IMG/VR virus record: IMGVR_UViG_3300005826_000294 | Location: 1 to 64,000 of that record | Reading direction: 5' to 3' (one strand) | DNA length: 64,000 nt | Shown here: one piece after another, positions 1 through 51,877 of the stretch | How positions within the stretch are numbered: position 1 is the first letter of the stretch | How the letters are laid out: every line of letters starts with the position of its first letter | The notes under the pieces: generated by a model | What the model was told of the DNA's origin: nothing | Databases searched by the model: none | Seen by the model: the letters and a program-made list of their open reading frames with translations, nothing else | Program-made: the position numbers and the translations under genes

Positions 1-63
1 GACCTAGACCAAGATTTACATAATTTTGGTTTCTTATATTTATTTTTCTTAAAAGGTTTTATT

Positions 64-240
64 TTAAAAATTCTTCGTTCCAAATTTAGATTTAGACCAA
101 GACCAAGGCCAAAATCCAGCCCAAGACCAAGACCAAGACCTAGACCAAGACCTAGACCTAGACCAAGACCAATACCAAGACCTAGACCAAGATTTACATC
201 TGTTTGGTTTCCTAAATTTATTTTTCCTAAAAGGTTTCAT
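64..240 (-). CDS. Basic Trp/Ser/Arg-repeat peptide (array unit)
   Basis: MKPFRKNKFRKPNRCKSWSRSW...SKFGTKNF; ATG 1 nt after the previous unit's TAA; paralogous units either side. Confidence 0.55.
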   Translation of the reverse strand: MKPFRKNKFRKPNRCKSWSRSWYWSWSRSRSWSRSWSWSWAGFWPWSWSKSKFGTKNF

Positions 241-241
241 T

Positions 242-394
242 TTAAAAATCCTTCGTTCCAAATTTAGATTTAGACCAAGACCTAGACTTAGACCAAGACC
301 AAGACCTAGACCAAGACCTAAACCAAAACCTAGACCAAGACCATGATTTACATGATCTTAGTTTCCTAATTTTACCTTTCTTAAAAGGTTTTAT
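242..394 (-). CDS. Trp/Ser/Arg-repeat peptide (array unit, ATA at the start position)
   Basis: IKPFKKGKIRKLRSCKSWSW...SKFGTKDF; start codon is ATA rather than ATG. Confidence 0.4.
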   Translation of the reverse strand: MKPFKKGKIRKLRSCKSWSWSRFWFRSWSRSWSWSKSRSWSKSKFGTKDF

Positions 395-410
395 TTTAAA
401 AATTCTTCGT

Positions 411-551
411 TCAATATCGAGATTTAATCCAAGACTCAAACCAAAACCTAGGCCAAGACCCACAAAATCTAGACTTATACCAAGATCTAGATCCAAACCA
501 CGATTTAAATAATTTCAATTTTCTAATTTTACTTTTCTTAAAAGGTTTCAT
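411..551 (-). CDS. Trp/Ser-repeat peptide (array unit, ends 5 codons early at TGA)
   Basis: MKPFKKSKIRKLKLFKSWFGSRSW...KSRY*; TGA stands where other units have GGA. Confidence 0.4.
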   Translation of the reverse strand: MKPFKKSKIRKLKLFKSWFGSRSWYKSRFCGSWPRFWFESWIKSRY

Positions 552-552
552 T

Positions 553-747
553 TTAAAAATTATTCGTTCCAAATTGAGATTTAATCCAAGACCAAGACCT
601 AGACTTAGACCAAGAATTAGACCAAGAATTAAGCCAAGACTTAGACCAAGACCCAGACCTAGACCAAGACCTAGACCAAGACCAAGACCAAGACCAAGAT
701 TTACATCTTTTTGGTTTTCTAATTTTACTTTTCTTAAAAGGTTTCAT
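553..747 (-). CDS. Trp/Ser/Arg-repeat peptide (array unit)
   Basis: MKPFKKSKIRKPKRCKSWSWSWSWSRSW...SQFGTNNF. Confidence 0.55.
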   Translation of the reverse strand: MKPFKKSKIRKPKRCKSWSWSWSWSRSWSRSGSWSKSWLNSWSNSWSKSRSWSWIKSQFGTNNF

Positions 748-911
748 TTTAAAAATTATTCGTTTCACATTGAGATTTAATCCAAGACCAAGTTAAAGAC
801 CAAAACCAAAATTCAGACCTAGACTGACACCAAGATTTACATAATTTTGGTTTTCTATATTTATTTTTTTAAAAAGTTTAAAAATTTAATTATATAAAAA
901 TATTTAATATA

Positions 912-974
912 ATCTTAACTTTGATTTGAATAGAAAAAAATAATTTATTAAATTATTCAAATCAAAGTTAAGAT
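912..974. terminator. Perfect 21-bp inverted repeat (terminator or processing hairpin)
   Basis: ATCTTAACTTTGATTTGAATA (912-932) and TATTCAAATCAAAGTTAAGAT (954-974) with a 21-nt loop; between the Sm-like gene stop and the array. Confidence 0.6.
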
Positions 975-1012
975 CGGTATGGAATTTAAATTCCATACCG
1001 ATCATTTTTACA

Positions 1013-1576
1013 CTACAAAACAGATTTATTCGATGCCCAAGTTGGAATACAAATCTGCTCTACTCCTTCAAAGCTTACAATCAAAGATCCTGGAATCTTT
1101 GATTCATGCTTTGTATTCTCAGATACAGCATCCCCTGTCTCATCAACTGCCCATACATCATGTAGAACCAATGATTGAACTCCTACTTTCTTTACTTTTC
1201 CACGATAAATCCAATTAAATCCCCAAACTGCTATATACCTGTCATCCCACTTTTCATCCTTTAAAACATCCTTCCATAGTCTTCCATTAATAGAACAATT
1301 TTCATTTGACTCATCCAATTTTGCATTGTTTGCAGCCCATGTTGGAATGCAAATTTGTTCAATAGAATCTAGATTTATAATTAGATCACTAGGAATCTTG
1401 GTCTCATGACTCACTTTTTGATCAGTTGCAAGACCTGTTTCTTCTACAGCATAAGGATCTCTTAAAGTAAGTGTTTGTGCATCTATATTACAAAGCTTTC
1501 CACGATAAACCCAATTCCAACTCCATACTGCAACATAACGACCCAAGAAATTTTCTTCACAAATAAACTCTTTCAT
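1013..1576 (-). CDS. Tandem Sm/LSm-like fold protein (two ~85-aa domains)
   Basis: Internal duplication RY(V/I)AVW..NW(V/I)YRGK...L.L.D..AV(E/D)ETG...HE(T/S)KIP..LI(I/V)...EQICIPTWA.N; AGGAG RBS before ATG 1576. Confidence 0.55.
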   Translation of the reverse strand: MKEFICEENFLGRYVAVWSWNWVYRGKLCNIDAQTLTLRDPYAVEETGLATDQKVSHETKIPSDLIINLDSIEQICIPTWAANNAKLDESNENCSINGRLWKDVLKDEKWDDRYIAVWGFNWIYRGKVKKVGVQSLVLHDVWAVDETGDAVSENTKHESKIPGSLIVSFEGVEQICIPTWASNKSVL

Positions 1577-1587
1577 TTTCTTTCTCC

Positions 1588-2742
1588 TTAAAAAACTTTT
1601 ACTATTCTTCCCCAAGGTGGGGTTCCACTACGATCTCTTTCACTCATCCATACAACAGGATATTGAGGCTTCTCTCCAAATGTTGCATGACAATCACTAA
1701 TTGCTACACAAACATCAATAATTCCTTTAAATTTATTAAAACCATCTGTTAATATAGTTCCTCCTCCTCCTTTCACATTTCCATATTTATATATATCTCT
1801 TATATTTTTAACATGGAAAAATGTTTGAACTTCTGTGTCAATTGATAAAAACCAAACATCTTTAAAATATTTACTAATATGTTTTACCTGAGATAAACAT
1901 TTATTTATTAATTCATTACTCATTGATCCTGATGTATCTAAAAGAATTCCAAGTCTTGACTCATATCCTTTAAGACCAGGATAAATTATATTACTTTGCC
2001 TCCTAGATAATTTAGCATATGAATAATCATCTTTACCTCTTGAACTATTGATGGAATTTTTTATTTTTAATCTAAAAATTTTCCTCCAATCTGCTTCTGG
2101 TTTAGAAAAGAACTCCTTTAGTTCAATTAATAAATTATTAGGAACATTTCCATGTTTTTCAGAATACTCCTTTATTAAAATTGCAGTTGTTCTTATAATG
2201 ATTTCTAAATCTTCTGGTGTAATTCCCTCTCCTGGTGTAATTCCCTCTCCTGGTATAGTTCCCTCTCCTTTATATTCTTCTACAAAAACATCCTGAATAA
2301 AAGATTTAAAATTTTCTTCAATATTATTTTTTAATTTTTCATAATAAAAATCTGCTGATTTAGATCTAGGAAAATTATAAGTTCTTGGATATAAAATTGG
2401 AAGACTACATGTAAATCCATATTGCTCCAAAATATCATTGTTATAAATATCAGAAGCCATATTAAATATTTTAGGAATTTTATTAGTTACTCTTTTAAAA
2501 TAATCTCCTAATAAATGAAGAATTTCATGTAATAATACAAACACCATATCTTCTTCATTTAATTTTAAACATTCTTCATTTATATGTAGAGTTCCTTTAT
2601 CTGAAATTGCCATATATGGAATTTTATTATTTATTACCGGCTTAATAATATAAAGTAAACTTGCCATATATGGTAATCTTTTTAAAGCTTTATATCTTAT
2701 TCTATATAAAAATTCATGACATTCTTTCTCCATTTTTGTCAT
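1588..2742 (-). CDS. VWA-domain protein with N-terminal HEXXH metallopeptidase (DUF2201-like)
   Basis: HEILH motif; MIDAS LLDTSGSM; GGGGT; SDC; downstream of a MoxR ATPase; GEGITP x3 linker. Confidence 0.85.
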   Translation of the reverse strand: MTKMEKECHEFLYRIRYKALKRLPYMASLLYIIKPVINNKIPYMAISDKGTLHINEECLKLNEEDMVFVLLHEILHLLGDYFKRVTNKIPKIFNMASDIYNNDILEQYGFTCSLPILYPRTYNFPRSKSADFYYEKLKNNIEENFKSFIQDVFVEEYKGEGTIPGEGITPGEGITPEDLEIIIRTTAILIKEYSEKHGNVPNNLLIELKEFFSKPEADWRKIFRLKIKNSINSSRGKDDYSYAKLSRRQSNIIYPGLKGYESRLGILLDTSGSMSNELINKCLSQVKHISKYFKDVWFLSIDTEVQTFFHVKNIRDIYKYGNVKGGGGTILTDGFNKFKGIIDVCVAISDCHATFGEKPQYPVVWMSERDRSGTPPWGRIVKVF

Positions 2743-3040
2743 ATTTTTCTCCTCGAATTAAATAATATCCATTTCCAAATTTAATTTTATTTATAGGAAT
2801 ATTTAATTTCTTAGAAATATTCTCCCTTTCATCAATAATCTTTGTTGCTGTTTTTTTATCTAAATATTTAATCATATCTTTGTTTTTTGCATCATCTAAA
2901 ACCTGTCCATATTTATTAACAATTAACTTATATAAAATTTTTTCTATATCATTGTTATACCAAGAAAATTCAAATATTTTTTTTAACCCATTCAAACCAC
3001 TAATCACGTCAATATTATTAATTATTTTTTCGTAATTCAT
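2714..3040 (-). CDS. Hypothetical protein
   Basis: ORF overlapping both neighbours in the operon. Confidence 0.6.
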   Translation of the reverse strand: MNYEKIINNIDVISGLNGLKKIFEFSWYNNDIEKILYKLIVNKYGQVLDDAKNKDMIKYLDKKTATKIIDERENISKKLNIPINKIKFGNGYYLIRGEKYDKNGERMS

Positions 3041-4077
3041 AGTTCTAATCCCTCAACCAGATTAAGAAACTCTTTAGAATTTCCTAAGTTCTTATTTAAT
3101 AGTTCCGTAACAACTTGAACTTTAATATCATTTATACTTATAGAAGACATCACCTCACAAAATTTAGGAACATGTTCATTATATTTAAAAACAAAACTCA
3201 AAGTAGCCATAATAGATGTGTAAATTTTATCTATCCTGTTTGGCATAGCATTTTTATATAAAATGTCAGTTGGAAGTGGAAGATCTAATTTCGCCATGTA
3301 CTCGTAAACTTCCTTTGTAATTCCTTCTCCAACACATCCTTTAATATAATCAAAAGCAGAAATTCTCTTTGTCCTACATGTTGCCCAAAGCCTACACGTC
3401 ATTTCCCATGATCTTGGTGAAGCAAATGATCTATCTTCAACATTTCCTTGAATATTATCTCTATTTGTTTTAAGATAATTAGTAATAATAGAAGTAACAT
3501 AACTATAATTTTCGTCCCATAGTTTTTTATCTATAGGAGAATAATCAACAACTTTTTGTTTATTGAATTGAAGGTAATCTCCAAACATTTCAACATCAGG
3601 TTTAAGATCAAAATGACAAAAACGATTGGCTAGTGGTGGTTCTAAATCTCCAGAATTTGCCCCCTCTTCTGCAGGGTTACATGCAGCAATAATTAAAGTG
3701 TCCTTTGGAAGAACAACCTCTCCTACAACTTTTTCACAAACAATTCTCAAAGCCGCTGCTTGAACAGCAGGAGGAGCACAATTTAGTTCGTCAAAAAATA
3801 AAATCCCACCATTATGTTTAACTAAATTATTAGCCCATGATGGTGGAAAAAGTTCAATTCCATTTTCTGTCCTTACTGGAAGACCACCTACATCTGCCGG
3901 ATCTCTAATACTTAAAATTACAACCTCACAATGAAGTCCCATTTGTTTTGCTATGGAAGAAATAATAGCACTTTTACCAATTCCAGGGGAACCCCAAAAT
4001 AATAGAGGAATCCCTCTTCCACCATCACTTCGTTGTGTAGCCCAACTGACTTCTATTGCTTTGCTTAGAATTTCCAT
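3037..4077 (-). CDS. MoxR-family AAA+ ATPase
   Basis: Walker A GSPGIGKS, Walker B LFFDELN, AACNP, ANRF, SPRSWE; likely start ATG 4077 after GGTGA. Confidence 0.85.
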   Translation of the reverse strand: MEILSKAIEVSWATQRSDGGRGIPLLFWGSPGIGKSAIISSIAKQMGLHCEVVILSIRDPADVGGLPVRTENGIELFPPSWANNLVKHNGGILFFDELNCAPPAVQAAALRIVCEKVVGEVVLPKDTLIIAACNPAEEGANSGDLEPPLANRFCHFDLKPDVEMFGDYLQFNKQKVVDYSPIDKKLWDENYSYVTSIITNYLKTNRDNIQGNVEDRSFASPRSWEMTCRLWATCRTKRISAFDYIKGCVGEGITKEVYEYMAKLDLPLPTDILYKNAMPNRIDKIYTSIMATLSFVFKYNEHVPKFCEVMSSISINDIKVQVVTELLNKNLGNSKEFLNLVEGLEL

Positions 4078-4101
4078 TACTTCACCTTTAAAATTTGTTT
4101 G

Positions 4102-4133
4102 TTTAAAAATTCTTCGTTCCAAATTGAGATTTA
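4102..4133. repeat. Solitary copy of the 32-bp array core motif
   Basis: 31/32 identical to the array copies at 63 and 552. Confidence 0.9.
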
Positions 4134-4140
4134 TTAAATA

Positions 4141-4217
4141 TAAGGTGTTTAGCTCAATTGAAAGAGCATCGGACAAAAAGATCCGGGAGATGTAGGTTCA
4201 ATTGAGCTGAACACCTT
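4141..4217 (+). ncRNA. tRNA-derived 21-bp hairpin in inverted orientation
   Basis: Arms 4141-4161 and 4197-4217 (one G-U on plus strand); 4141-4202 aligns with the tRNA-like gene at 12514-12586. Confidence 0.55.
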
Positions 4218-4234
4218 AGGTAATCGGTAATCCT

Positions 4235-4399
4235 CTATTGATATTTTATTCTCCGCTGTTTCTTTCTTTGAATCGTCTTTTCTTTTTCCTTCTTCTTAAT
4301 ATATTTATGCTCATAATTCTTAGAAGATTTATTATCTCCTTCTTCATCAATTTCATCATAGTCAAACCAATTATCATATTCAGGCCATTCTTCATACAT
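4235..4399 (-). CDS. Small acidic/basic hypothetical protein
   Basis: AGGAG RBS before ATG 4399. Confidence 0.5.
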   Translation of the reverse strand: MYEEWPEYDNWFDYDEIDEEGDNKSSKNYEHKYIKKKEKEKTIQRKKQRRIKYQ

Positions 4400-4429
4400 T
4401 TTTACTCCTCCAAAAATTTCAGAAAATAA

Positions 4430-4592
4430 ATGATTTGAAATCTTTTGTGTGCTCATGAGAACATGAACTATTGTTAGAAATTACATCACTACCAAAAGAA
4501 TAATTTATCCAAAATTTATCAGGATATTCAACAACAGGTCCATCTTCTTGATGAAATTTTCCAATTAAACACTATTCTTTTTTAATATTCAT
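4430..4592 (-). pseudogene. Degenerate H(R/Q)EDGP-repeat protein remnant
   Basis: MNIKKE*CLIGKFHQEDGPVVEYP; in-frame TAG at 4572-4574; paralog at 5101-5370. Confidence 0.5.
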
Positions 4593-4636: not shown

Positions 4637-4709
4637 TAGGCCCGCAGGGATTTGAACCCTGAACCTTTTGGTTAAAAGCCAAATACTCTACCAGTTGAGT
4701 TACGGACCC
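4637..4709 (-). tRNA. tRNA-Lys(UUU)
   Basis: Cloverleaf; anticodon arm TTTGG-CTTTTAA-CCAAA; T-loop GTTCAAAT; no encoded CCA. Confidence 0.9.
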
Positions 4710-4716
4710 TAAAATT

Positions 4717-5046
4717 TTATCTATATATTCCCTTCTTTGAATTACACTTCATACAATAATGTCCTACTTCCTTTGATGAAGATATTTTCTTTTTTTGGAA
4801 TTTTGAAGAAAATTTTGTAAGAGTTATAGTAATAATATCTTTAACAACACATGGACATTCAACAATAAAAACTATAAATATAAAAACAATATATAATGGC
4901 CAAAAAATCCACCATACAATATCATTCTCAATTTCATATGGTTCGACCATTTTAAGTTTAATTTTATTACCAATTACTATAAAAATTAATGGTATGGTTA
5001 CATAACTAATTATACATATTAAAAAAATTATTGGATATAAAACCAT
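4717..5046 (-). CDS. Membrane protein with a C-terminal CxxC tail
   Basis: Two hydrophobic segments; tail SSSKEVGHYCMKCNSKKGIYR. Confidence 0.65.
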   Translation of the reverse strand: MVLYPIIFLICIISYVTIPLIFIVIGNKIKLKMVEPYEIENDIVWWIFWPLYIVFIFIVFIVECPCVVKDIITITLTKFSSKFQKKKISSSKEVGHYCMKCNSKKGIYR

Positions 5047-5100: not shown

Positions 5101-5370
5101 TTACTTCTTTCCGCCAACCTCGATGATTTTTCCATTGTACCTATTATTAAACTCTTCCTCGCTTAATTTTTTTCCGTTTAAAAACCAAAATTTCTCTCCA
5201 TTAACATACTCAACAGCTGGACCATTTTCTCGATGATGTTTTCCATTTAAATACCATACTTTATATCCATTATTATATTCAATAGCTGGTCCATCTTCTC
5301 GATGATGCTTTCCTTCTTTATTAAACCACTCTGTTCTGTCTTTATATACTCTTACAATATATTCTTTCAT
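5101..5370 (-). CDS. HREDGPA-repeat protein
   Basis: Two GKHHRE(D/N)GPA(I/V)EY repeats; AGGAG RBS. Confidence 0.8.
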   Translation of the reverse strand: MKEYIVRVYKDRTEWFNKEGKHHREDGPAIEYNNGYKVWYLNGKHHRENGPAVEYVNGEKFWFLNGKKLSEEEFNNRYNGKIIEVGGKK

Positions 5371-5768: not shown

Positions 5769-5841
5769 TAGGTGCGCAGGGACTTGAACCCTGAACCTTC
5801 TGGTTAAAAGCCGGATACTTTTCCAATTGAGTTACGAACCC
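5769..5841 (-). tRNA. tRNA-Lys(UUU), one mismatch each in the acceptor and anticodon stems
   Basis: Paralog of 4637-4709; loop CTTTTAA. Confidence 0.7.
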
Positions 5842-5848
5842 TAAAATT

Positions 5849-6394
5849 TTATCTATAAATCCCTTTTTTCGGATTACACTTCATACAATAATGTCTTACT
5901 TCCTTTGGTGAAGATATTTCCTTTACATGTGGGATACTGTTTCTCGGATCCAGACATGTCTCAGTCAGGGTTGCCCCTCGCAGATTCGCACTTATCAGAT
6001 TCGCGCCGTCCAGATCCGCGCCGGTCATATCCGCGCCTCGCAAATCCGCGGAGGTCAAGTCCGCGCCGGTCAGATCCGCGCCGGACAGATACGCCCATTG
6101 CAGATTCGCCCATCGCAGACACGCACCTCGCAGATCCGCGCCGGACAGATCCGCGCGAGCCAGATCCGCGCCGGACAGTTTCGCGCCGAACAGATCCGCG
6201 CCGGACAGTTTCGCGTTGGCCAGAACCGCGTCTCGCAGTTTCGCGTTGGCCAGAACCGCGTCTCGCAGATCCGCGCCGGACAGTTTCGCGCCTTGCAGAT
6301 TCGCGTTGGCCAGATCCGCGCCTTGCAGATTCGCGCCTCGCAGATCCGAGCCTGGCCTGATATTGTACTCGCGACCATTTATCGTCCTCTTCAC
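5849..6394 (-). CDS. Pentapeptide-repeat protein fused to the C-terminus of the 4717-5046 protein
   Basis: A(D/N)L.G repeats; ends ISSPKEVRHYCMKCNPKKGIYR. Confidence 0.85.
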   Translation of the reverse strand: MKRTINGREYNIRPGSDLRGANLQGADLANANLQGAKLSGADLRDAVLANAKLRDAVLANAKLSGADLFGAKLSGADLARADLSGADLRGACLRWANLQWAYLSGADLTGADLTSADLRGADMTGADLDGANLISANLRGATLTETCLDPRNSIPHVKEISSPKEVRHYCMKCNPKKGIYR

Positions 6395-7113
6395 CCTAGC
6401 ACCTCCAGTTTCCTACATCTCCACTTATTGCTTGTCCTGTGCAGATCTTCCCTCCTGCACCTGACACGTACGATACTTCGATCAGGGTATTTTTTTCCTA
6501 TCCATTCCCTACTCGCTAGGTAGATTCCGGGGTGACACTTTGTGTCAGACGTGGAGAAATAAGGGGCTGTGTATTCTCCAGGTGTGTAATGTGTGTCTCC
6601 AACCTCAGTAGACCTCTCGGTCCGCCAGCCGTAGATCCAGTCGTCACCCCCGATCTCGAGTCCTCCTCCGAGTATCTCTGCGTCTGTCACGCGTGGGATA
6701 CTGTTGCTCGGATCCAGACATGTCTTAGTCAGATCCGCGCCGGTCATATCCGCGCCTCGCAAATCCGCGGAGGTCAAGTCCGCGCCGGTCAGATCCGCGC
6801 CTCGCAGATCTGCGGAGGTCAGATCCGCGCCGGTCAGATCCGAGTCGGCCAGACCCGCGAAGGTCAAGTCCGCGCCGGTCAGATCCGCGCCTCGCAGATC
6901 CGCTCCGGTCATATCCGCGCCTCGCAGATTCGCGTGTCGCAGATCCGCGTTGGTCAGATACGCGCCTCGCAGATTTGCGTCTCGTAGATCCGCGCCGGCC
7001 AGATACGCTTGTCGCAGATCCCTCCATTGCAGATTCGCCCGTCGCAGATCCGCGCATCGTAGATTTGCGCCTGGCTTGATATTGTACTCGCGACCATTTA
7101 TCGTCCTCTTCAC
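6391..7113 (-). CDS. Pentapeptide-repeat protein with a C-terminal domain (CHPGIYLA motif)
   Basis: ADLTG/ADLRG repeats; 4-bp overlaps with both neighbours. Confidence 0.9.
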   Translation of the reverse strand: MKRTINGREYNIKPGANLRCADLRRANLQWRDLRQAYLAGADLRDANLRGAYLTNADLRHANLRGADMTGADLRGADLTGADLTFAGLADSDLTGADLTSADLRGADLTGADLTSADLRGADMTGADLTKTCLDPSNSIPRVTDAEILGGGLEIGGDDWIYGWRTERSTEVGDTHYTPGEYTAPYFSTSDTKCHPGIYLASREWIGKKYPDRSIVRVRCRREDLHRTSNKWRCRKLEVLG

Positions 7114-12245: not shown

Positions 12246-12513
12246 TTAGAATAACATATTTCTGTTATTATAGTGTTATTGTCTCGTAGAGACATGTACA
12301 CATACACATATCTATATGCCTTTAGTTATACGGCATTTGGCAAAAAATTAATTCTACTATGTGACCACCCCCGCCCCTCGTATATACACCTGATATTGCT
12401 CAGGTTTCTTGGGCCCACCCTCGTTTGAAAATAATGATCTTTTCGTGTAAGGTCCTAAAATTACAAAAGATCATTGTCCAAAGGACAAATGATCCAGCGC
12501 CATGATCTTTTAA

Positions 12514-12586
12514 CGGTGTTGTGGGAATCGAACCCACGTCTTTCGAGTCTTTCTGCTCGACGCTCTTCCAGTTGAGCTAAACACCT
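12514..12586 (-). tRNA. Atypical tRNA-like gene with an 8-nt anticodon loop (CAGAAAGA, Phe-like)
   Basis: D, anticodon (TCGAG/CTCGA) and T arms intact; 6-bp acceptor; A33 instead of U33. Confidence 0.6.
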
Positions 12587-12629
12587 TACATTTTTCTACT
12601 CCTGAACAATATTGAAATTATATGGTGGT

Positions 12630-39405: not shown

Positions 39406-39735
39406 TTATTTCTCCAATTTTTGTAAATGTTTTGCCCAAGAGTCAATATGGATTTCATAATACCAATTAGGCTTATCTTTTATTAATATAAGTCTAGGAA
39501 CTTTCCATTGAGCTACAATCTCATCATTCTTATAAACATCTAAAGCTCCATCATAATTGTTCCAAACTTCTATGTTTGAAGATGAAAGATGCTCTTTCAT
39601 ATCTTCCATGTCCAATTCAAATAATTGTTCAGAAATTCCCAAAGCTAAAAGAACTTCAACTAACCAATCATGCTTTTCTTCCTCTATAACTTTCTGTTCA
39701 TCTCCCCTATCTGCTAAAACCAACATTATCCACAC
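39406..39735 (-). CDS. Hypothetical protein
   Basis: ORF track. Confidence 0.65.
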   Translation of the reverse strand: MWIMLVLADRGDEQKVIEEEKHDWLVEVLLALGISEQLFELDMEDMKEHLSSSNIEVWNNYDGALDVYKNDEIVAQWKVPRLILIKDKPNWYYEIHIDSWAKHLQKLEK

Positions 39736-42700
39736 CTACTCTCACCACAATCTAAACAACTCATACATCCTTCTTCCATTCTTATATTTGAACTTCCACA
39801 CTTTTCACATAATACTTTCCTCATATCTAAACTTTCAGATAAAATATTACAAAGTCGTGCGGATAAACTTCCAGCATAAGAATTAGAATCTAATATGTCA
39901 ACCGCTTTATCTAAATTATTGGTTTTCATAGATAATGATAAAAATCTTGTTAATCTTGTTAAAGAATTATTGCTTCTATCAATATATTTTTGTATTCTAT
40001 CTTCCGCAACTCCCTGATTTGAAAGCATTTTTATTAGAGCATTACTAGTTTTAATAAATGAATCACTTTCTTTCTTTTTATAATTAAGAACAAAAACTTG
40101 ATAAGGATGCTTTATATTTTTATCCTTATAAGAAATCATTATGTAAAACTTATCTCCTCCTTCGGCTCTAACACATCTTGTAATAGTATCCATATTTGGA
40201 GTTTTTTTCTTCGCAAATTTCTCTGTAACCAAAACTCCTTCTCTTGATCCTTCTCTATAAACAGTAATTCCTTTTAATCCTTCTCGCCAAGCATCCATAT
40301 AAATTTGACTAACAACTTCTGGAGAAACATCTGCTGGTAAATTTATTGTACTAGAAATACTAGCATCAATGTGTTTTTGAAGAACCCCTTGAAGTTTAAC
40401 ACGATGTTGATAATCTATATCATGAGCGGTCACCCAATATTCTGGTAAATCTTGTTTCCCAACAATGTTAAAAAACCTAGAAATTCCCTGATGATATACT
40501 GAAAATTCCTTTTTCTCTTCTTTGCCCAACATTACATTTCTAGTATATGAAAAAGCAAAAATTGGTTCTGCACCTCCAGAACATTGAGCTATAATTGAAA
40601 GTGATCCGTTTGGAGCAATTGTTGAAATTGCGACATTTCTTAAACCATTTTCTTTAGCCTTTTGTTTTAATTCCTCTGGTAATGTAGCACAAAAACCACG
40701 AGAAAAATGAATATTTGGATCATATAAAGGAAATGGTCCACGAAGTTTTGCTAATTCAATAGAAGCATCATATTCATGTAATTTTTTAAACTCCATTAAT
40801 TTATCCGCAAACTGAATTGCTTCATCAGAATCATATTTTATTTTGAGAGAAACAAACATATCCGCAAGACCAGTAAGGCCTAACCCTATTCTACGACCAG
40901 ACACCGATGCTTCTTCCTGCTCAGCAAGAGCATGCTTTCCTATGTTTAATTGTACTACATTATCCAAATGTCTAACACCACGAGAAATCATCTCACCAAA
41001 TAATTCAAAATCAAATTCTGCTTGATCAGTAAAAGGATTTTTAACAAATTTATGTAATAATAGAGAAGATAATACGCAAGTTCCACCATTTTCTAATATT
41101 TGCTCACCACAATTTAAATTATTGAAATAAAACCATTTTCTTTTTCCAAAAGGAGTTGTACTTTCAAAAGCTCCTGTAAAAAAATTATGGAATTCATCTA
41201 CAGTACCATTGTAAACATTTTCATATCCACAAAACTCTACACTAACTACTCTATGATTATAATCTAAAGCAGATTCTTTTAATTGTTTGAAATTGAATTT
41301 TAATGTTTGGATAACATTGTTTTCGTTACAATATTGTTCCCATTCTTTTTTTCTAGGTTCTCTACTTAATTTAAATTTTAAATCTGTATATGCTTTAAGT
41401 TGATTTTCTTTATCTGTATATTCTTTAGATTTATATCCAGAATTTATATTACCCATATAAACAGAACGGCATTTTCTAGAACAAATTCCTGATTCTCTTC
41501 TACTATGATGAATTTCATATTCTTTACCACAAATTTCACAATTTTTAATAATAAAAATTTTCTTGTCCCTAATAATACAATTATATCCTTGTTCTAATAA
41601 TTCTAGATAGTATTTTTTATTTATAGGATCAAGATCAATATTATTTAAACCACATTTGTTAAATGCCCATTTTGATAATCCTAAAATCCCTCCAAGATGG
41701 TCATTACGCCATTTTGGAAATTGCTCCGTAATTTTATTATTTCTAGCATATTTAATCCAATCTTCATTAGAAAACATACATCCCAATTCTTTTGTAAGTA
41801 AAACTGCATGTTGCTTTAATTCTTCATTAGAAACATTACTAATGAATTTTGAATCATTTTCAAATCTAGTTATAATTCTTAGACTATCTCCTTTTTTTAA
41901 TTCATCAGTTCTTCTATAAGAACCATTTTTTAGTCTAAATTTATGATTATTAGTCACTTTAAGATGATTGCCATCATCAAATGTAATTTTATAAACTGGT
42001 TGATTATATCCAGTAATTCTAGGATTACGCATATTCCTTATAGATATTTTTTCATCATTGTCAAAACAAAATACAGGAACATCTTTACCTTCTTCAGCTA
42101 ATTGTTTAATCGAAACATTATTTCTTCCATCAGCAACATAAACCAAAGTATCACCAACAACACATGGATTTGTAGAATGAACTTTTAGTCTCTCATACGA
42201 ATCCGATGGAGACATTTCAACCATTTTTGTCCAAAATAAAAGACCAGGCTCTGCTGAATCACGAGCAGATAAGATAATTTTTTTCCATAAATCACGAGCC
42301 TTAATAGTTCTTTTTATTGTCTCGTGGTAAGTTTCAAAAGACAAAGTAAAATCATCATCATTTTCAACAGCCATCATAAAATCATCTGTTAATTTAATAC
42401 TTATATTAGCATATTTTACTTTATCTATATTATTATGCTTCATTTCAACAAACTTTTCAATATCTGGATGATTAACAGGAATTGTAATCATAAGAGCACC
42501 ACGACGCCCATGTTGTCCAACAAGCCCGGTAGTTAATGAATAAAGATCCATAAAACTTACAGCTCCTGTAGAAAATTTAGCACTATTAGACACCTTTGAA
42601 TCTTCTGGCCTAAGTTCTCCAATACATAGACCAATACCGCCACCGTATGAATATGTATGTGCTAATTTCTTTGCTGCATTGAAAATACCTTCTAAACTAT

Positions 42701-43103
42701 CATCTTCAATCTTTGTAACATAACAATTAGTGTAAGTTGCCTTATTAATATACTTATTTCCCAAAGCAAACATTTGCCTGCCTGCTGGTAAAAAATATTC
42801 ATATAATTCACGAAAATAACCTACTTTTTTTTTACCATTTGGAAACTCATTTTCTGCGGAAACTATACATTCTGCCCATCTGTCTTTTGCTTCTTCCAAA
42901 GTAAATTCAATTATCTTATTATCACCATCTCGAAGAGCATATTTTTTATAGAAAACAGATGTAGCAATTTCATCACCGCCAAAAGACTTTAAGGTTTTCA
43001 ATACATTTTCTCTATTTAGACCGCAATTATTTAATTCTGTATCAGATAAAATCCTATCTATTGTGGAACCAATATCATCATTTAAATAAATTAAGTTATT
43101 CAT
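39726..43103 (-). CDS. nrdJ: Ribonucleotide reductase large subunit (class II NrdJ-like) containing an intein
   Basis: PAGRQM, NCY, GGGIG, RRGA, NP/CGEQ split by the intein, TIAPNG, C-terminal zinc ribbon; no nrdB in the window. Confidence 0.85.
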   Translation of the reverse strand: MNNLIYLNDDIGSTIDRILSDTELNNCGLNRENVLKTLKSFGGDEIATSVFYKKYALRDGDNKIIEFTLEEAKDRWAECIVSAENEFPNGKKKVGYFRELYEYFLPAGRQMFALGNKYINKATYTNCYVTKIEDDSLEGIFNAAKKLAHTYSYGGGIGLCIGELRPEDSKVSNSAKFSTGAVSFMDLYSLTTGLVGQHGRRGALMITIPVNHPDIEKFVEMKHNNIDKVKYANISIKLTDDFMMAVENDDDFTLSFETYHETIKRTIKARDLWKKIILSARDSAEPGLLFWTKMVEMSPSDSYERLKVHSTNPCVVGDTLVYVADGRNNVSIKQLAEEGKDVPVFCFDNDEKISIRNMRNPRITGYNQPVYKITFDDGNHLKVTNNHKFRLKNGSYRRTDELKKGDSLRIITRFENDSKFISNVSNEELKQHAVLLTKELGCMFSNEDWIKYARNNKITEQFPKWRNDHLGGILGLSKWAFNKCGLNNIDLDPINKKYYLELLEQGYNCIIRDKKIFIIKNCEICGKEYEIHHSRRESGICSRKCRSVYMGNINSGYKSKEYTDKENQLKAYTDLKFKLSREPRKKEWEQYCNENNVIQTLKFNFKQLKESALDYNHRVVSVEFCGYENVYNGTVDEFHNFFTGAFESTTPFGKRKWFYFNNLNCGEQILENGGTCVLSSLLLHKFVKNPFTDQAEFDFELFGEMISRGVRHLDNVVQLNIGKHALAEQEEASVSGRRIGLGLTGLADMFVSLKIKYDSDEAIQFADKLMEFKKLHEYDASIELAKLRGPFPLYDPNIHFSRGFCATLPEELKQKAKENGLRNVAISTIAPNGSLSIIAQCSGGAEPIFAFSYTRNVMLGKEEKKEFSVYHQGISRFFNIVGKQDLPEYWVTAHDIDYQHRVKLQGVLQKHIDASISSTINLPADVSPEVVSQIYMDAWREGLKGITVYREGSREGVLVTEKFAKKKTPNMDTITRCVRAEGGDKFYIMISYKDKNIKHPYQVFVLNYKKKESDSFIKTSNALIKMLSNQGVAEDRIQKYIDRSNNSLTRLTRFLSLSMKTNNLDKAVDILDSNSYAGSLSARLCNILSESLDMRKVLCEKCGSSNIRMEEGCMSCLDCGESRCG
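41112..42164 (-). mobile_element. 351-aa intein in the RNR active-site loop
   Basis: Starts CVVGDTLV, TNNHKF block B, VYNGTV block F, ends NNLN before Cys+1. Confidence 0.88.
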
Positions 43104-48835: not shown

Positions 48836-50446
48836 TTAATCTCCTTTACATAATTTCTTTAAAATATCTACTTTCTTTTTAGATTGGTAGATCTCAACTG
48901 CAGTTTTTATAATTTCTGATTTTGATGCTAAAATAGGTTCATAAACACAATCTTTTTTAAATCCCTCCCATCTATAAATAACTTTATAACCATTTTCACA
49001 AAGAGTATTTAATTTATTTATTGTTTTATATAATAAAGTATAAAACATCTTTCCAACTTTTTTATTTACTTTATTTGGATTAAAGACTGCTGGATTTCCG
49101 TGCCAAAAATCTCCTAAAAATTCATATACAACATTATCTTTAAATCCGTCAGCAAAAAACCTCTTCCCATTTATTTTTATTAATTTTTCCCTTTTCTTAA
49201 TATTTTTGTTGTTTAACCATTTAGTAGAAACCTTTGATATGTTTTTAGAACAATGAGGACATCCTCTTTCATATCTATTACAAATTGTAACATTCCATTC
49301 ATGATTATTTTTACAAATCCACCAAACCTTTTTATGAGATCTCGGTAGAACATCCTTTGGTGTTAAATCTCCATTTCTTTTATAATTCCACTCTTTAGCT
49401 AATTCGGGATTTATTTTATCTAAACAATTATCTTTACATACTTTTTTATTAGAACAATAGGGACATTTACTACCATTATTTCTACCGGCAACTCTAGCTT
49501 TCCATTCATGATTATTTTCACAAATCCACCATATTTTTTTATCAGAACCTGATGTTACATCATCTGGTGTTAAAACATTTTTAGAACTCCATTGCTTCGC
49601 TAATTCAGGATTTATTGTTGATAAACAATTATCTTCGCATACTTTATTTCCTGAGCAATAAGGACATGTGTTTTTATCTTTTCTATTTATTTGAGCTTTC
49701 CATTCATGATTATTTTTACAAATCCACCATACTTTCATATTTGAACCAGCCGTAACCTTATTTGGAGTTAAATTTCCATTTTTAGAACTCCATTCTTTTG
49801 ATAGTTCTGGGTGAGTTGTGGCCAAGCAATTATCTTCACATACTTTTTTACCAGCACAATAGGGACAACCTACTTTTTGCTTTCCACTTCTATGATAAAT
49901 TTTTGCTTTCCATTCGTGATTGTTTTCACAAATCCACCATACTTTTTTATTAGATCCTGATGTAAAATTTTTTGGTGTAAGATTACCATTTTTTGTAGGA
50001 TGCCACTGTTTCACTAATTCAGGATTTATTGTTGCTAAACAATTATCTTCGCATACTTTATTTCCCGAGCAATAAGGACAATTATTACCTTTATTTCTAT
50101 CTGCAATTCTAGCTTTCCATTCATGATTTTTCTCACAAATCCACCACACTTTTTTTTCTGATCCTTGGGTTACATCTTTGGGAGTTAAAATATTTTTAGA
50201 ACTCCATTGTTTTGCTAATTCAGGATTTATTGTTGCTAAGCAATTATCTTCGCATACTTTCTTATTAGAACAATAAGGACAATTTCTTCCATTATTTCTA
50301 TGACTTACACTCGCTTCCCATTCGTGATTTTTCTCACACAACCACCACACTTTTTTAGTAGAATTTACGGAAACATCATTAGGTGTTAAAGTATTTTTAG
50401 AACTCCATTGCTTCGCTAATTTAGGATTTTTTATGGAAAGGCTCAT
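48836..50446 (-). CDS. Putative homing endonuclease with ~7-8 zinc-ribbon repeats (DUF4379-like)
   Basis: Repeated NPELAKQW...KVWW.C...HEW.A...CPYC; YEFLGDFWHGNP. Confidence 0.85.
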   Translation of the reverse strand: MSLSIKNPKLAKQWSSKNTLTPNDVSVNSTKKVWWLCEKNHEWEASVSHRNNGRNCPYCSNKKVCEDNCLATINPELAKQWSSKNILTPKDVTQGSEKKVWWICEKNHEWKARIADRNKGNNCPYCSGNKVCEDNCLATINPELVKQWHPTKNGNLTPKNFTSGSNKKVWWICENNHEWKAKIYHRSGKQKVGCPYCAGKKVCEDNCLATTHPELSKEWSSKNGNLTPNKVTAGSNMKVWWICKNNHEWKAQINRKDKNTCPYCSGNKVCEDNCLSTINPELAKQWSSKNVLTPDDVTSGSDKKIWWICENNHEWKARVAGRNNGSKCPYCSNKKVCKDNCLDKINPELAKEWNYKRNGDLTPKDVLPRSHKKVWWICKNNHEWNVTICNRYERGCPHCSKNISKVSTKWLNNKNIKKREKLIKINGKRFFADGFKDNVVYEFLGDFWHGNPAVFNPNKVNKKVGKMFYTLLYKTINKLNTLCENGYKVIYRWEGFKKDCVYEPILASKSEIIKTAVEIYQSKKKVDILKKLCKGD

Positions 50447-50719
50447 ATTTTTTCTCCTATATCCCATTATACGAAACTAGAATTCAAAATTCAACGCAAT
50501 TTTGGAAAAAATTATTCAAGAACAATAATATTAAATTTGTTATTTGAGTTAGATAAAGCACAATATCTATGATAACCATCAATTATCCTATATTTTTTAT
50601 CATCTTTTATATAAACTCCAATTGGATATTTATAATCCTTATATTTTTCAACAATCTGTTTATCTAATTTTCTATAATGTTCTAGATTTGGAATTACTAA
50701 ATCATCTAAACCGACTGTT

Positions 50720-51709: not shown

Positions 51710-51877
51710 TTAACCTTGTTTTTTATCATCAATAACTAATTTTACATCCATATTTTGCCACTCTCTTATAATTCTCTGTCTCCACGTTGGATCTGTAACT
51801 TCCATTTCCAAATAAACTTGACCTGTATCCGTATTTACCTTTACATTTAAAAGTCTAGCAATTTCTATTTCAACCAT
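51710..51877 (-). CDS. 55-aa hypothetical protein missed by the ORF track
   Basis: MVEIEIARLLNVKVNTDTGQVYLEMEV...; GGAG RBS. Confidence 0.55.
   Translation of the reverse strand: MVEIEIARLLNVKVNTDTGQVYLEMEVTDPTWRQRIIREWQNMDVKLVIDDKKQG

What the first reader, a model, noticed from the sequence alone, without database searches (positions are those of the whole stretch)
1..4217. Candidate new system: MoxR ATPase, VWA-peptidase, tandem-Sm protein and a peptide/repeat array, bracketed by two 21-bp hairpins
Seen: one minus-strand run of hairpin (4141-4217), lone repeat core (4102-4133), MoxR, ORF, VWA/HEXXH, double Sm-like protein, hairpin (912-974) and array. Both hairpins have 21-bp stems, and each is directly followed by array-type sequence. 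Known: MoxR-VWA pairs are chaperone/remodelling modules and Sm folds bind RNA. Inference: the shared 32-bp motif ties the operon to the array, either as a protein machine acting on a family of variable WS/RS peptides or as an RNA-guided or RNA-processing unit. The array runs off the left edge, so a key partner gene may be missing from this window.
Basis: partly seen in the sequence, partly recalled or inferred. Interest (0 to 1): 0.78.

Follow-up and report, generated by a model that had tools for sequence, protein, structure and literature searches.

The report
Phage Sm-fold gene with Trp/Ser-peptide genes
The left end of this jumbo-phage contig is a greatly expanded copy of a widespread, apparently undescribed phage gene pair, in which an Sm-fold (RNA-chaperone-like) protein gene is followed by small genes made of TGGTCT-type repeats that encode serine-tryptophan/arginine peptides; the MoxR and VWA genes beside it are an already known chaperone-peptidase pair and not part of that core.

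Summary

The 32-bp "repeat" is not a guide-RNA repeat. It is the junction between consecutive small genes: tail codons KSQFGTKNF, stop, SD-like purines, next ATG. The copy upstream of MoxR is a decayed junction that relatives lack.

The array runs on into a second contig of the same sample through an 82-nt exact overlap. That gives at least 31 peptide genes, with a radical-SAM gene beside one array; homologues of that gene elsewhere have no such peptides.

Comparative tests move the link. MoxR plus the VWA-zincin protein is a pair already described in jumbo phages and is tied to the array only in this lineage. The Sm-fold gene is the real partner:
- 120 viral contigs were found by the hexamer pattern alone. 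In all 26 Sm-like ORFs in them, the repeat ORF starts 18-162 nt downstream on the same strand.
- The peptide ATG often overlaps the Sm stop codon (ATGA).

The Ser-(Trp/Arg/Gly) frame carries the start codons (109 of 167 regions against 13 in the other open frame). Yet GGTCT is also conserved at synonymous sites: TCT is 94% of Ser codons against 27% in flanking genes.

Whether the Sm protein's ligand is the peptide, the GGUCU-repeat RNA, or both remains open. Function is unknown.

The parts
1..751 (-). Tandem array of small genes for Ser-(Trp/Arg)-repeat peptides. Intact ORFs lie at 556-747 (64 aa), 414-551 (46 aa), 245-394 (50 aa, ATA in place of ATG) and 67-240 (58 aa); a unit at 1-62 is cut by the contig end. 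Each is MKPFKK..K.C leader, then (S-W/R/..)n, then KSxFGTKNF tail. Successive genes are joined as TAA-A-ATG, so each unit length is 1 mod 3.
   Evidence: Only this frame is open over whole units; the other five frames carry 29-335 stops. The array continues in L005 by an 82-nt exact overlap.
748..778 (-). Junction motif AAATCTCAATTTGGAACGAAGAATTTTTAAA. Other copies lie at 552-582, 395-425, 241-271 and 63-93. It holds the last nine codons and stop of one peptide gene and the SD-like leader (GAAGA, 9 nt before the ATG) of the next.
   Evidence: In L005 all 30 copies precede ATGAAACC... starts. First-in-array units keep the motif although no ORF precedes them.
752..872 (-). Decayed first unit of the array. 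The ATG is lost and AAG has become TAA, while the core and tail (KLCKSW...SQCETNNF*) are still readable.
   Evidence: Read from the sequence; D4 repeat family copy at 830-872.
889..918 (-). Best sigma-70-like match in the region (TTAAGA-18-TATAAT, 10 of 12), directed into the array. Candidate array promoter.
   Evidence: This is a consensus match only and is not significant against shuffles.
912..1003 (-). Double hairpin between the Sm gene and the array: a terminator-like palindrome at 972-1003 and a 21-bp perfect hairpin at 912-974.
   Evidence: (z = -9.2). L002 and L003 have two hairpins of different sequence at the same place.
1013..1576 (-). Tandem Sm-fold protein, 187 aa, acidic (pI 4.9, charge -8). 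Member of an uncatalogued phage Sm-like family with no Pfam hit.
1588..2742 (-). Zincin-like metallopeptidase (HEILH) fused to a VWA domain with an intact MIDAS motif (DTSGS); phrog_1314.
   Evidence: The pair is described in PMC7824862.
2714..3040 (-). 108-aa orphan ORF between the MoxR and VWA genes, conserved only in L002 and L003 (59% identity).
3037..4074 (-). MoxR-type AAA+ ATPase with Walker A (GSPGIGKS) and Walker B (ILFFDE); phrog_1297.
4088..4133 (-). Relic of an array junction: tail codons NKSQFGTKNF, stop, then the first five codons of a next unit with ATG mutated to CAA. It lies 13 nt upstream of the MoxR ATG.
   Evidence: (family D3, 87% identity). Absent upstream of MoxR in L002 and L003.
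4141..4218 (+). tRNA-derived element that folds as a 22-bp hairpin. It aligns end to end with the odd tRNA at 12512-12587, with the 3' half of the T-arm replaced so that it pairs with the D-arm. Its loop (4179-4197) is 18 of 19 complementary to MoxR codons 57-63 (3886-3904).
   Evidence: (I3, I7).

Best explanation
SHOWN.
- The region is the accessory end of an incomplete jumbo phage (301 kb, 30% GC).
- It contains one co-directional gene run: MoxR AAA+, a 108-aa orphan, zincin-VWA, and an acidic tandem Sm-fold protein. Its end is marked by a double hairpin.
- A multigene array follows, possibly with its own promoter (a consensus match only). The array continues on a second contig and totals at least 31 genes.
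- Each unit is a small ORF: a Lys-rich leader with one Cys, a slippage-prone (NGG-TCT)n core read as (Trp/Arg/Gly)-Ser, a conserved tail, then a stop placed one base before the next ATG.
- The '32-mer' is this gene junction.
- The conserved unit across phages is not the four-gene operon. It is a two-gene cassette: an Sm-fold gene followed at once, usually with overlapping stop and start, by one or more such repeat ORFs. The window holds an expanded version of it, with the Sm domain duplicated and the peptide gene amplified.

INFERRED (about 45% together).
- The Sm-fold protein and the product of the repeat genes act as a pair made in a coupled ratio.
- The acidic Sm protein (charge -8) binds and holds the disordered peptides, which are strongly cationic in the lineages computed (pI about 12, +11 to +14; one distant lineage only +3.5). 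It would act as chaperone, antidote or assembly platform.
- The peptides themselves act by bulk properties, binding nucleic acid or membranes through Arg/Lys and Trp, rather than by exact sequence. That would explain why length and the W/R/G order vary freely while the termini are kept.
- Conservation of GGUCU at synonymous sites means the mRNA repeat is itself under selection. It is possibly a second ligand of the Sm protein or a self-pairing structure that sets expression.
- MoxR and zincin-VWA are a neighbouring virion-assembly or processing module. At most they were recruited in this one lineage.
For: Architecture.

Conservation of operon, hairpins and array in relatives at 76% identity.

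Sm fold.

Sm-repeat link:
- Repeat ORFs lie near Sm-like genes in 4 of about 13 lineages that were found through the Sm protein.
- Independently, all 26 Sm-like ORFs in 120 pattern-ascertained viral loci have the repeat 18-162 nt downstream on the same strand.
- The peptide ATG sits at -4, +1 or +2 from the Sm stop in most cassettes.

Translation of the W/R/G-S frame:
- An ATG within 30 codons upstream occurs in 109 of 167 regions, against 13 of 167 for the equally open G-L frame.
- Flanking genes are co-oriented in 35 loci and opposed in 2.
- An AGGAG sits 9 nt before the ATG in L042.

Charge complementarity. The peptide is predicted unfolded, pLDDT about 25.

RNA-level constraint: TCT is 94% of Ser codons against 27% in flanking genes, across GC 0.27-0.58. 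The repeat RNA folds with z from -0.6 to -7.0, and four of the five tested lie between -3.4 and -7.0.

MoxR/VWA not linked elsewhere.
Against: - No physical interaction is shown; the complex prediction gave no answer.
- The window's Sm gene is separated from the array by about 140 nt with hairpins and a possible promoter, unlike the tightly coupled cassettes.
- Synonymous-site conservation of GGTCT, and the fact that the variable base is the wobble of an antisense (Arg-Pro)n frame, show that peptide-level selection alone does not explain the repeats.
- Most Sm-like relatives found through the protein sit in a different triad (p110, Sm, DUF6745) without repeat ORFs.
- Loci were found with a TCT-based pattern, which biases the codon statistics.
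- Metatranscriptome support is weak and multi-mapping.
Confidence: 0.45

Rival explanations
1. The functional product is the repeat RNA, not the peptide. The Sm-fold protein binds the (NGGUCU)n transcript encoded just downstream and forms an RNP that acts as a scaffold, sponge or regulator. This is loosely like a type III toxin-antitoxin pair, where a protein sits beside a tandem RNA repeat. The ORF features would then be secondary, for example translation used only to control RNA folding.
For: - Five of six positions of the hexamer are fixed regardless of codon degeneracy. TCT is 94% of Ser codons against 27% in flanking genes, and NGG is kept for Arg and Gly in genomes of 27-58% GC.
- Solved Sm and LSm proteins are RNA binders.
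- Adjacency is 26 of 26.
- The repeat RNA is strongly structured in four of five tests.
Against: - Start codons are enriched eight-fold in one frame.
- Leaders and tails are conserved as protein, with K/R substitutions.
- Stop and start are coupled to the Sm gene.
- The Trp fraction stays near 35% whatever the GC content.
- The Sm protein is acidic and shows no evident Sm2 Arg-Gly motif (read from the sequence).
- Homo-oligomeric Sm rings usually prefer homopolymeric U or A tracts (general knowledge).
Confidence: 0.25
2. One reading: MoxR, zincin-VWA and Sm act as one machine on the peptides. The zincin would cut the leader or tail while MoxR-VWA remodels or loads the peptides, for instance into the capsid as protamine-like DNA-condensing cargo.
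For: - Operon followed by array is conserved in the window, L002 and L003.
- Iyer et al. 2021 proposed a virion-assembly and processing role for this MoxR and peptidase-VWA pair.
- The peptides have conserved termini that could be targeting or cleavage signals.
- High gene dosage fits a bulk structural product.
Against: - The linkage exists only in one lineage, represented by two independent genomes.
- None of about 55 other loci with repeat ORFs, nor the 31 Sm-ascertained loci, has a MoxR homologue, and only one (L151) has a weak VWA match.
- Other arrays in L005 sit beside unrelated genes.
- The upstream motif is a relic absent in relatives.
Confidence: 0.12
3. A RiPP-like cluster: the peptides are precursors (leader, core, follower) cross-linked at Trp by the radical-SAM enzyme found next to the array in L005, then trimmed by the zincin.
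For: - A radical-SAM gene lies directly after a 7-gene array (L005 1471-2493).
- It has CX3CX2C plus seven C-terminal Cys, and its weak best matches are MoaA, PqqE, AlbA, PapB and SkfB.
- The tail WSWSKSKF recalls the darobactin core (from memory only).
Against: - The rSAM belongs to a family of more than 3,500 proteins at 56-73% identity. Its members in L006-L008 have no W-rich ORFs nearby.
- No rSAM occurs in other repeat-ORF loci.
- No RRE/PqqD or SPASM Pfam hit.
- All NCBIfam matches are far below their cut-offs.
- The cores are 30-60 residues of low-complexity repeat, unlike known RiPP cores.
Confidence: 0.06
4. No gene at all: a (TGGTCT)n minisatellite, or an antisense (Arg-Pro)n coding repeat, with the ORFs a by-product of a stop-free repeat.
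For: - The repeat is stop-free in four of six frames.
- The variable base is synonymous in the antisense Arg-Pro frame.
- Plain (TGGTCT)n tracts occur in many bacterial genomes.
Against: - Antisense ORFs lack start codons and have variable ends.
- They would be antisense to gene blocks in 35 of 37 informative loci.
- ATG enrichment, SD sequences and stop-start coupling favour the sense frame.
- About 27 of 31 units are intact from leader to tail.
Confidence: 0.05

Closest known systems
MoxR AAA+ with a vWA cochaperone fused to an N-terminal metallopeptidase, in group 2.2 jumbo phages (Iyer et al. 2021, Viruses 13:63; PHROGs 1297 and 1314; N4 gp24-like ATPases)
   Same: Same two families (AAA_3/AAA_5; DUF2201_N plus DUF2201), adjacent and co-directional in a jumbo phage. 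Walker A/B, HEXXH and MIDAS motifs are intact.
   Different: Here a 108-aa orphan lies between the two genes, and an Sm-fold gene and a peptide array follow. Those additions are absent from cultured-phage loci.
Sm/LSm/Hfq proteins, including Pfam Phage_Hfq and the DUF2642 Sm-like domains of Bacillus spore-coat protein CotB
   Same: Same fold: N-terminal helix plus five bent strands, with TM 0.6-0.78 to archaeal SmAPs and LSm. The ESM Atlas search places tandem DUF2642/CotB-type proteins nearest. CotB also joins such domains to a Ser-rich basic repeat region, SKR, which the kinase CotH phosphorylates (PMC7821199).
   Different: No Pfam Sm family matches. The protein is acidic. The family's invariant residues (YRG, two Glu, P..W) are not the classical Sm2 RNA-binding motif. 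The Ser-rich repeats are separate gene products and are Trp-rich. No kinase was seen.
Type III toxin-antitoxin loci (ToxIN type): a protein gene next to a tandem RNA repeat array, separated by a terminator hairpin
   Same: A protein gene and a tandem repeat array sit on one strand with a hairpin between them. The repeat shows nucleotide-level conservation.
   Different: The order is reversed. The repeats are ORFs with starts and stops. The protein has an Sm fold and is not an endoribonuclease. No PADLOC hit.
Arg/Trp-rich cationic antimicrobial peptides and protamine-like Arg/Ser peptides (from general knowledge)
   Same: Small, strongly cationic and unstructured, with a composition dominated by Trp, Arg and Ser. 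The core is 23% W and 39% S, and peptide pI is about 12.
   Different: Much longer (44-87 aa), with a strict Ser-X alternation and no signal peptide. They occur in arrays of dozens of paralogues in a phage. One lineage (L045) is only weakly basic.
RiPP precursor arrays with radical-SAM/SPASM maturases
   Same: Multiple tandem short ORFs have conserved ends and variable middles. A MoaA/PqqE-clade rSAM lies beside one array.
   Different: The rSAM association is not conserved. There is no RRE. The cores are long low-complexity repeats.

Membership tests
MoxR-type AAA+ ATPase | AAA_3/AAA_5 domain with Walker A and Walker B motifs | tested here: met
   Pfam AAA_3 at 28.7 bits (cut-off 27) and AAA_5 at 27.9 bits (cut-off 22). 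phrog_1297 at 6.6e-54. GSPGIGKS and ILFFDE read from the translation.
MoxR-vWA chaperone pair with peptidase-fused vWA (jumbo phage type) | A vWA protein with MIDAS and an N-terminal HEXXH domain, encoded next to the ATPase | tested here: met
   DUF2201_N at 1.7e-15 and DUF2201 at 4.3e-15. HEILH and DTSGS read. Same strand, with one 108-aa ORF between. The pair is described in PMC7824862.
Sm/LSm fold | N-terminal helix followed by five strongly bent beta strands | tested here: met
   AF2 model with pLDDT 88 shows two such units. The top 50 Foldseek PDB hits are all Sm, LSm or SmAP, with target TM 0.54-0.78.
Sm/LSm fold | Conserved RNA-binding residues (Sm1 Asp/Asn, Sm2 Arg-Gly) and ring oligomer | tested here: inconclusive
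   The family's invariant residues are Y24, R25, G26, L38, E58, E73, P78 and W80. No evident Sm2 RG motif after strand 4. The oligomeric state was not modelled.
RiPP biosynthetic cluster | Dedicated maturase whose adjacency to the precursors is conserved | tested here: not met
   The rSAM lies next to an array only in L005. Homologues in L006-L008 lack W-rich ORFs, and no rSAM was found in the 120 repeat loci.
RiPP biosynthetic cluster | RiPP recognition element (PqqD-like) or SPASM domain in the maturase or a neighbour | tested here: not met
   Pfam finds only Radical_SAM in the 340-aa protein, and the neighbours have no PqqD hit. PapB and twitch models match far below their cut-offs.
CRISPR-like or RNA-guided array | Constant repeats separated by unique spacers, with associated nuclease or RT genes | tested here: not met
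   The stretches between motifs are hexamer-repeat coding cores. PADLOC gave no significant hit. No Rfam family beyond tRNA.
Type III toxin-antitoxin (ToxIN-like) | Endoribonuclease toxin that processes an adjacent non-coding tandem RNA repeat | tested here: not met
   The protein has an Sm fold. The repeats carry ATG, SD and stop signals. No PADLOC hit.
Sm-fold gene plus (NGGTCT)n repeat-ORF cassette (defined here) | The repeat ORF lies on the same strand directly downstream of an Sm-like gene | tested here: met
   In the window the Sm stop is at 1013, a decayed unit starts at about 872 and the first intact ATG is at 747. In 26 of 26 other Sm-like ORFs the repeat starts 18-162 nt downstream.
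Sm-fold gene plus (NGGTCT)n repeat-ORF cassette (defined here) | Translational coupling of the peptide ATG to the Sm stop | tested here: not met
   Most cassettes show -4 to +6 nt. The window, L002 and L003 instead have about 140-165 nt with two hairpins and a possible promoter.

The most novel reading that the evidence does not exclude
Phages widely carry a two-part module in which an Sm-fold protein recognises a GGUCU-period RNA repeat that is at the same time translated into a Ser-(Trp/Arg/Gly) polypeptide. The repeat would be a dual-use sequence, with selection on both RNA and peptide, forming an RNP or peptide complex with a role in host takeover or defence evasion. The jumbo phage here would have amplified it to more than 30 copies.
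Probability: 0.2. Interest if true: 0.9.

Novelty: categorically new. Interest (0 to 1): 0.74.

Why it matters
If the cassette is what it appears to be, it is a common and unannotated piece of phage biology. It pairs a new Sm-like protein family (no Pfam model) with a class of extreme low-complexity peptides: 23% Trp and 39% Ser in the core in this genome. These peptides are easily dismissed as microsatellites, and gene callers and low-complexity filters hide them.

The synonymous-site conservation makes the cassette a clean test case for sequences selected at both the RNA and the protein level. The perfect adjacency gives an immediate, cheap experimental handle: two small genes.

For annotation, it shows that the MoxR and VWA-peptidase pair should not be read as part of the array system.

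Tried and rejected
- Leftward extension from the contig's own JGI record failed: that record starts at the same base, and it could not be searched as a handle.
- Exact-motif and leader-pattern scans of viral and metagenome contigs found nothing.
- tblastn of the Sm protein against cultured phages found nothing.
- The 107/382/170-aa genes in L005 are not paralogues of the window's 108-aa/VWA/Sm trio. The 170-aa 'Sm' hit there was an artefact of its inclusion in the model and vanished once it was left out.
- Complex prediction of VWA, Sm and peptide gave no answer.
- The 108-aa ORF has no informative neighbour in the ESM Atlas search.
- PADLOC shows no defence-system membership.
- The radical SAM as dedicated maturase was rejected as the main explanation.
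- Antisense poly-(Arg-Pro) coding was considered because the variable base is its wobble position. It was rejected for lack of start codons and for opposing the orientation of neighbouring genes.
- Literature searches for DUF2201, DUF6745, tryptophan-rich jumbo-phage proteins, phage RiPPs and the repeat strings found no description of the array or the cassette.
- Hairpins related to the window's do not flank the L005 arrays.

Full report
**Source and setting.** The window is the first 64 kb of a single 301,683-bp viral record (29.9% GC). IMG/VR classes it as a provirus-trimmed fragment, and CheckV estimates it about 75% complete. Genes run on the minus strand. The window also carries nine tRNAs, ribonucleotide reductase, DnaB and helicases, so this is a jumbo phage. 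The left edge of the window is the end of the contig itself, including in the 312,596-bp JGI record it derives from.

**Checking the observation.**
- The hairpin at 912-974 has a 21-bp perfect stem. It is the longest of only eight perfect hairpins (stem >=14, loop <=45) in the whole genome; Markov controls gave 0, 0 and 1.
- It abuts a 16+16 palindrome at 972-1003. Together they fold with z = -9.2.
- The upstream hairpin at 4141-4218 has 22-nt arms with one mismatch.
- The 31-nt motif occurs six times in 301 kb: five times in the array and once at 4102-4132.
- Pfam assigns 3037-4074 to AAA_3/AAA_5 and 1588-2742 to DUF2201_N (HEXXH) plus the DUF2201 VWA-like domain. PHROGs place them in phrog_1297 and phrog_1314.
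- The 187-aa protein has no Pfam hit. Its AlphaFold model (pLDDT 88) shows two copies of helix plus five strands. The first 50 Foldseek matches in the PDB are all Sm, LSm or archaeal SmAP chains. The ESM Atlas search places DUF2642/CotB-type tandem Sm-like proteins, LSM and Phage_Hfq nearest.

**What the array is.** Read on the minus strand, each unit is a small ORF.
- The ORF runs MKPFKK-K-(R/K)K----C-K, then a core of alternating Ser and Trp/Arg/Lys/Gly/Phe, then KS-x-FGT-K-N-F and a stop.
- Consecutive genes are joined as TAA-A-ATG, so all unit lengths are 1 mod 3.
- Two units have ATA in place of ATG.
- In the continuation contig all 30 copies of the motif precede a peptide start. First-in-array units keep the motif although no ORF precedes them, so it also serves the downstream gene.
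- Core composition over 30 units is 39% Ser, 23% Trp and 10% Arg. Only this frame stays open across whole units.
- The copy upstream of MoxR (4088-4133) is a decayed junction: tail, stop, then a next-gene start with ATG mutated to CAA. The nearest relatives lack it.

**The missing left side.** A profile of six peptides searched against 5.8 billion proteins found nine hits, all on one 21.5-kb contig of the same metagenome sample (L005).
- The first 82 nt of L005 equal the reverse complement of window 1-82 exactly, including the rare ATA variant. L005 has the same GC content and paralogues of the window's 73-aa and MORN-like ORFs.
- L005 adds at least 26 peptide genes in five arrays, giving at least 31 in all.
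- A 340-aa radical-SAM gene follows the first array. It has CX3CX2C and seven C-terminal Cys, and its weak best matches are to MoaA, PqqE, AlbA, PapB and SkfB.
- This suggested a RiPP cluster. However, the rSAM belongs to a family of more than 3,500 proteins at 56-73% identity. Its members in three other large phage-like contigs have no Trp-rich ORFs nearby, and no rSAM was found in other repeat loci. I therefore treat the adjacency as probably incidental.

**Which neighbour is really linked.** The MoxR and peptidase-VWA pair is already described for group 2.2 jumbo phages, with a proposed role in virion assembly and processing (PMC7824862).
- It occurs in hundreds of cultured phages. In Atu_ph07, PA5oct and phiFa it has no Sm gene or array beside it.
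- The Sm protein's only close homologue (76% identity) lies on two short metagenome contigs, L002 and L003. These repeat the whole arrangement: AAA, 107 aa, DUF2201, Sm, two hairpins of unrelated sequence, then peptide genes (MKPYKK...C, SW repeats, KSNSGTRSF, TAAAATG).
- More distant Sm-like relatives found by exhaustive HMMER and locus scans never have MoxR or VWA nearby.
- Most of them sit in a different conserved triad: a 110-aa protein, the Sm-like gene, and DUF6745.
- Four of about 13 such lineages carry Ser-Trp repeat ORFs within 1.5 kb, with other leaders such as MKMITRxNS in L042 and L045.

**An independent test.** I searched collections for the DNA pattern TCTTGGTCTNGGTCTTGGTCT alone.
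- The bacterial hits are mostly plain microsatellites.
- In the viral set, 55 loci carry 112 small ORFs of the form Met, short basic leader, then (Ser-Trp/Arg/Gly)n. Many are in abutting arrays, such as seven in L073.
- An Sm-like HMM built without these loci found 26 ORFs in 25 of them. In all 26 the repeat begins 18-162 nt downstream on the same strand.
- The peptide ATG usually overlaps or abuts the Sm stop, commonly at -4, +1 or +2.
- No DUF6745, p110, MoxR or rSAM homologue occurs in these loci, and there is only one weak VWA match (L151).
- The conserved unit is therefore the Sm-fold gene plus the repeat ORF. The window has a duplicated Sm domain and a hugely amplified peptide gene.

**Peptide, RNA, or both.** Several results favour translation of the W/R/G-Ser frame.
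- An ATG within 30 codons upstream, with no intervening stop, occurs in 109 of 167 repeat regions. The equally open Gly-Leu frame has one in 13 of 167.
- Flanking genes are co-oriented with this frame in 35 loci and opposed in 2.
- A canonical AGGAG lies 9 nt before the ATG in L042.
- Leaders and tails are conserved as protein.

The repeats are also constrained as nucleic acid.
- TCT makes up 94% of Ser codons in these ORFs against 27% in flanking genes, across loci of 27-58% GC.
- NGG is kept even for Arg and Gly.
- Only the first base varies. Its G/C share follows genome GC (rho 0.44), while T (Trp) stays near 35%.
- That variable base is the wobble position of an antisense (Arg-Pro)n frame. 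However, antisense ORFs lack start codons, have variable ends, and would oppose the gene blocks.
- The repeat RNA folds into long, periodically interrupted hairpins. Four of five tested have z between -3.4 and -7.0, and the fifth has z = -0.6.
- Part of the codon bias may come from how the loci were found and from slippage.

The peptides are strongly basic (pI about 12, up to +14) and are predicted unfolded. The Sm proteins are acidic (pI 4.6-5.0).

**Mechanism.** The genetic architecture, the cassette and the coupling are shown. The rest is inferred. My preferred reading (about 45%) is that the Sm-fold protein is the dedicated partner of the repeat-gene product. It would hold a polycationic, aromatic, disordered peptide whose action depends on bulk composition. 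The GGUCU repeat in the mRNA would be a second constrained layer. A purely RNA-level RNP is the main rival (about 25%). The four-gene machine, a RiPP pathway and a non-coding repeat are less likely, for the reasons above. Metatranscriptome contigs from four estuary runs match the Sm and MoxR genes exactly at low depth. They match the array region at higher depth but ambiguously, so expression is not established.

**The hairpins.** The downstream pair sits where L002 and L003 also have two hairpins. It overlaps the best promoter-like match pointing into the array, so it most likely marks the operon end and array start.

The upstream one is a different kind of element.
- It aligns end to end with an odd tRNA (four-base anticodon call) at 12512-12587, in inverted orientation. 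The 3' half of its T-arm is changed so that it pairs with the D-arm.
- Its loop is 18 of 19 complementary to MoxR codons 57-63. Only two such inverted 19-mers exist in the genome, and controls gave none.
- The match uses this genome's own synonymous codons, and it competes with the local stem in the MFE fold.
- This is unexplained. It may be a 5'-UTR regulatory pairing.

**Verdict.** The known part is the MoxR and VWA-peptidase pair. The new part is a widespread Sm-fold plus Ser-(Trp/Arg/Gly) repeat cassette, for which I found no family model and no literature.

Noticed in passing
window 4141-4218 with 3886-3904 and 12512-12587: The upstream 'hairpin' is a rearranged, inverted copy of an odd tRNA (ARAGORN: anticodon gaaa). 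Its loop is 18 of 19 complementary to MoxR codons 57-63, matching this genome's own synonymous codons. Five of the six differences from the parent tRNA move toward the MoxR sequence. It is a possible 5'-UTR/CDS pairing or a recombination footprint.
   Followed up: partly
window 12512-12587 (-): A tRNA-like gene with a four-base anticodon call (gaaa) and an 8-nt anticodon loop, sitting among nine tRNAs that include four tRNA-Lys(UUU). It may be a frameshift-suppressor-like tRNA or a pseudo-tRNA.
   Followed up: no
L005 1471-2493: The radical-SAM protein next to the array belongs to a very large, tightly conserved family: more than 3,500 proteins at 56-73% identity, on many jumbo-phage-like contigs. 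One of them is labelled Candidatus Gracilibacteria. The family's function is unknown and it is not tied to the peptides.
   Followed up: partly
L009, L016-L048 (for example L045 1116-2480): A conserved phage triad, gene by gene: a 110-aa protein (GEVTGHxH...RQREYDPLAAE, 50-63% identity across loci), a single or tandem Sm-like protein, and a DUF6745 protein of about 200 aa. In some proteins the first and third are fused. Function unknown.
   Followed up: partly
window 5849-7113 (-): Two adjacent pentapeptide-repeat genes lie in a patch of about 50% GC within a 30% GC genome. Both start MKRTINGREYNI. They look like a recent acquisition followed by duplication.
   Followed up: no
window 4637-4792 and 5769-5924; 5101-5370; L005 2801-3121 and 9287-10126: A duplicated block contains tRNA-Lys (88% identity). 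MORN/DUF6745-like repeat ORFs and a 73-aa ORF (4235-4456) have paralogues in L005. This end of the genome is a hotspot of tandem duplication.
   Followed up: partly
window 39726-43103 (-), 48836-50467 and 51865-53499 (-): The ribonucleotide reductase large subunit is 1,125 aa and matches its family in two separated stretches (residues 47-254 and 662-1124), so it may hold an insert such as an intein. Two paralogous HNH-endonuclease-like genes lie nearby.
   Followed up: no
L169-L260 (bacterial genome contigs): Plain (TGGTCT)n tracts occur in many unrelated bacterial genomes, including 70% GC actinomycetes, mostly without a consistent ORF. L238 (Patescibacteria MAG) carries a true phage-type repeat ORF, MRGKKQKWSGSWS...
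   Followed up: partly
window 1-800 in estuary metatranscriptome runs X2 and X3: Short contigs 90-95% similar to the repeat cores reach a summed depth of 90-360, while the operon genes sit at 1-4. Related repeat transcripts may be abundant in these RNA libraries, but the mapping is ambiguous.
   Followed up: partly
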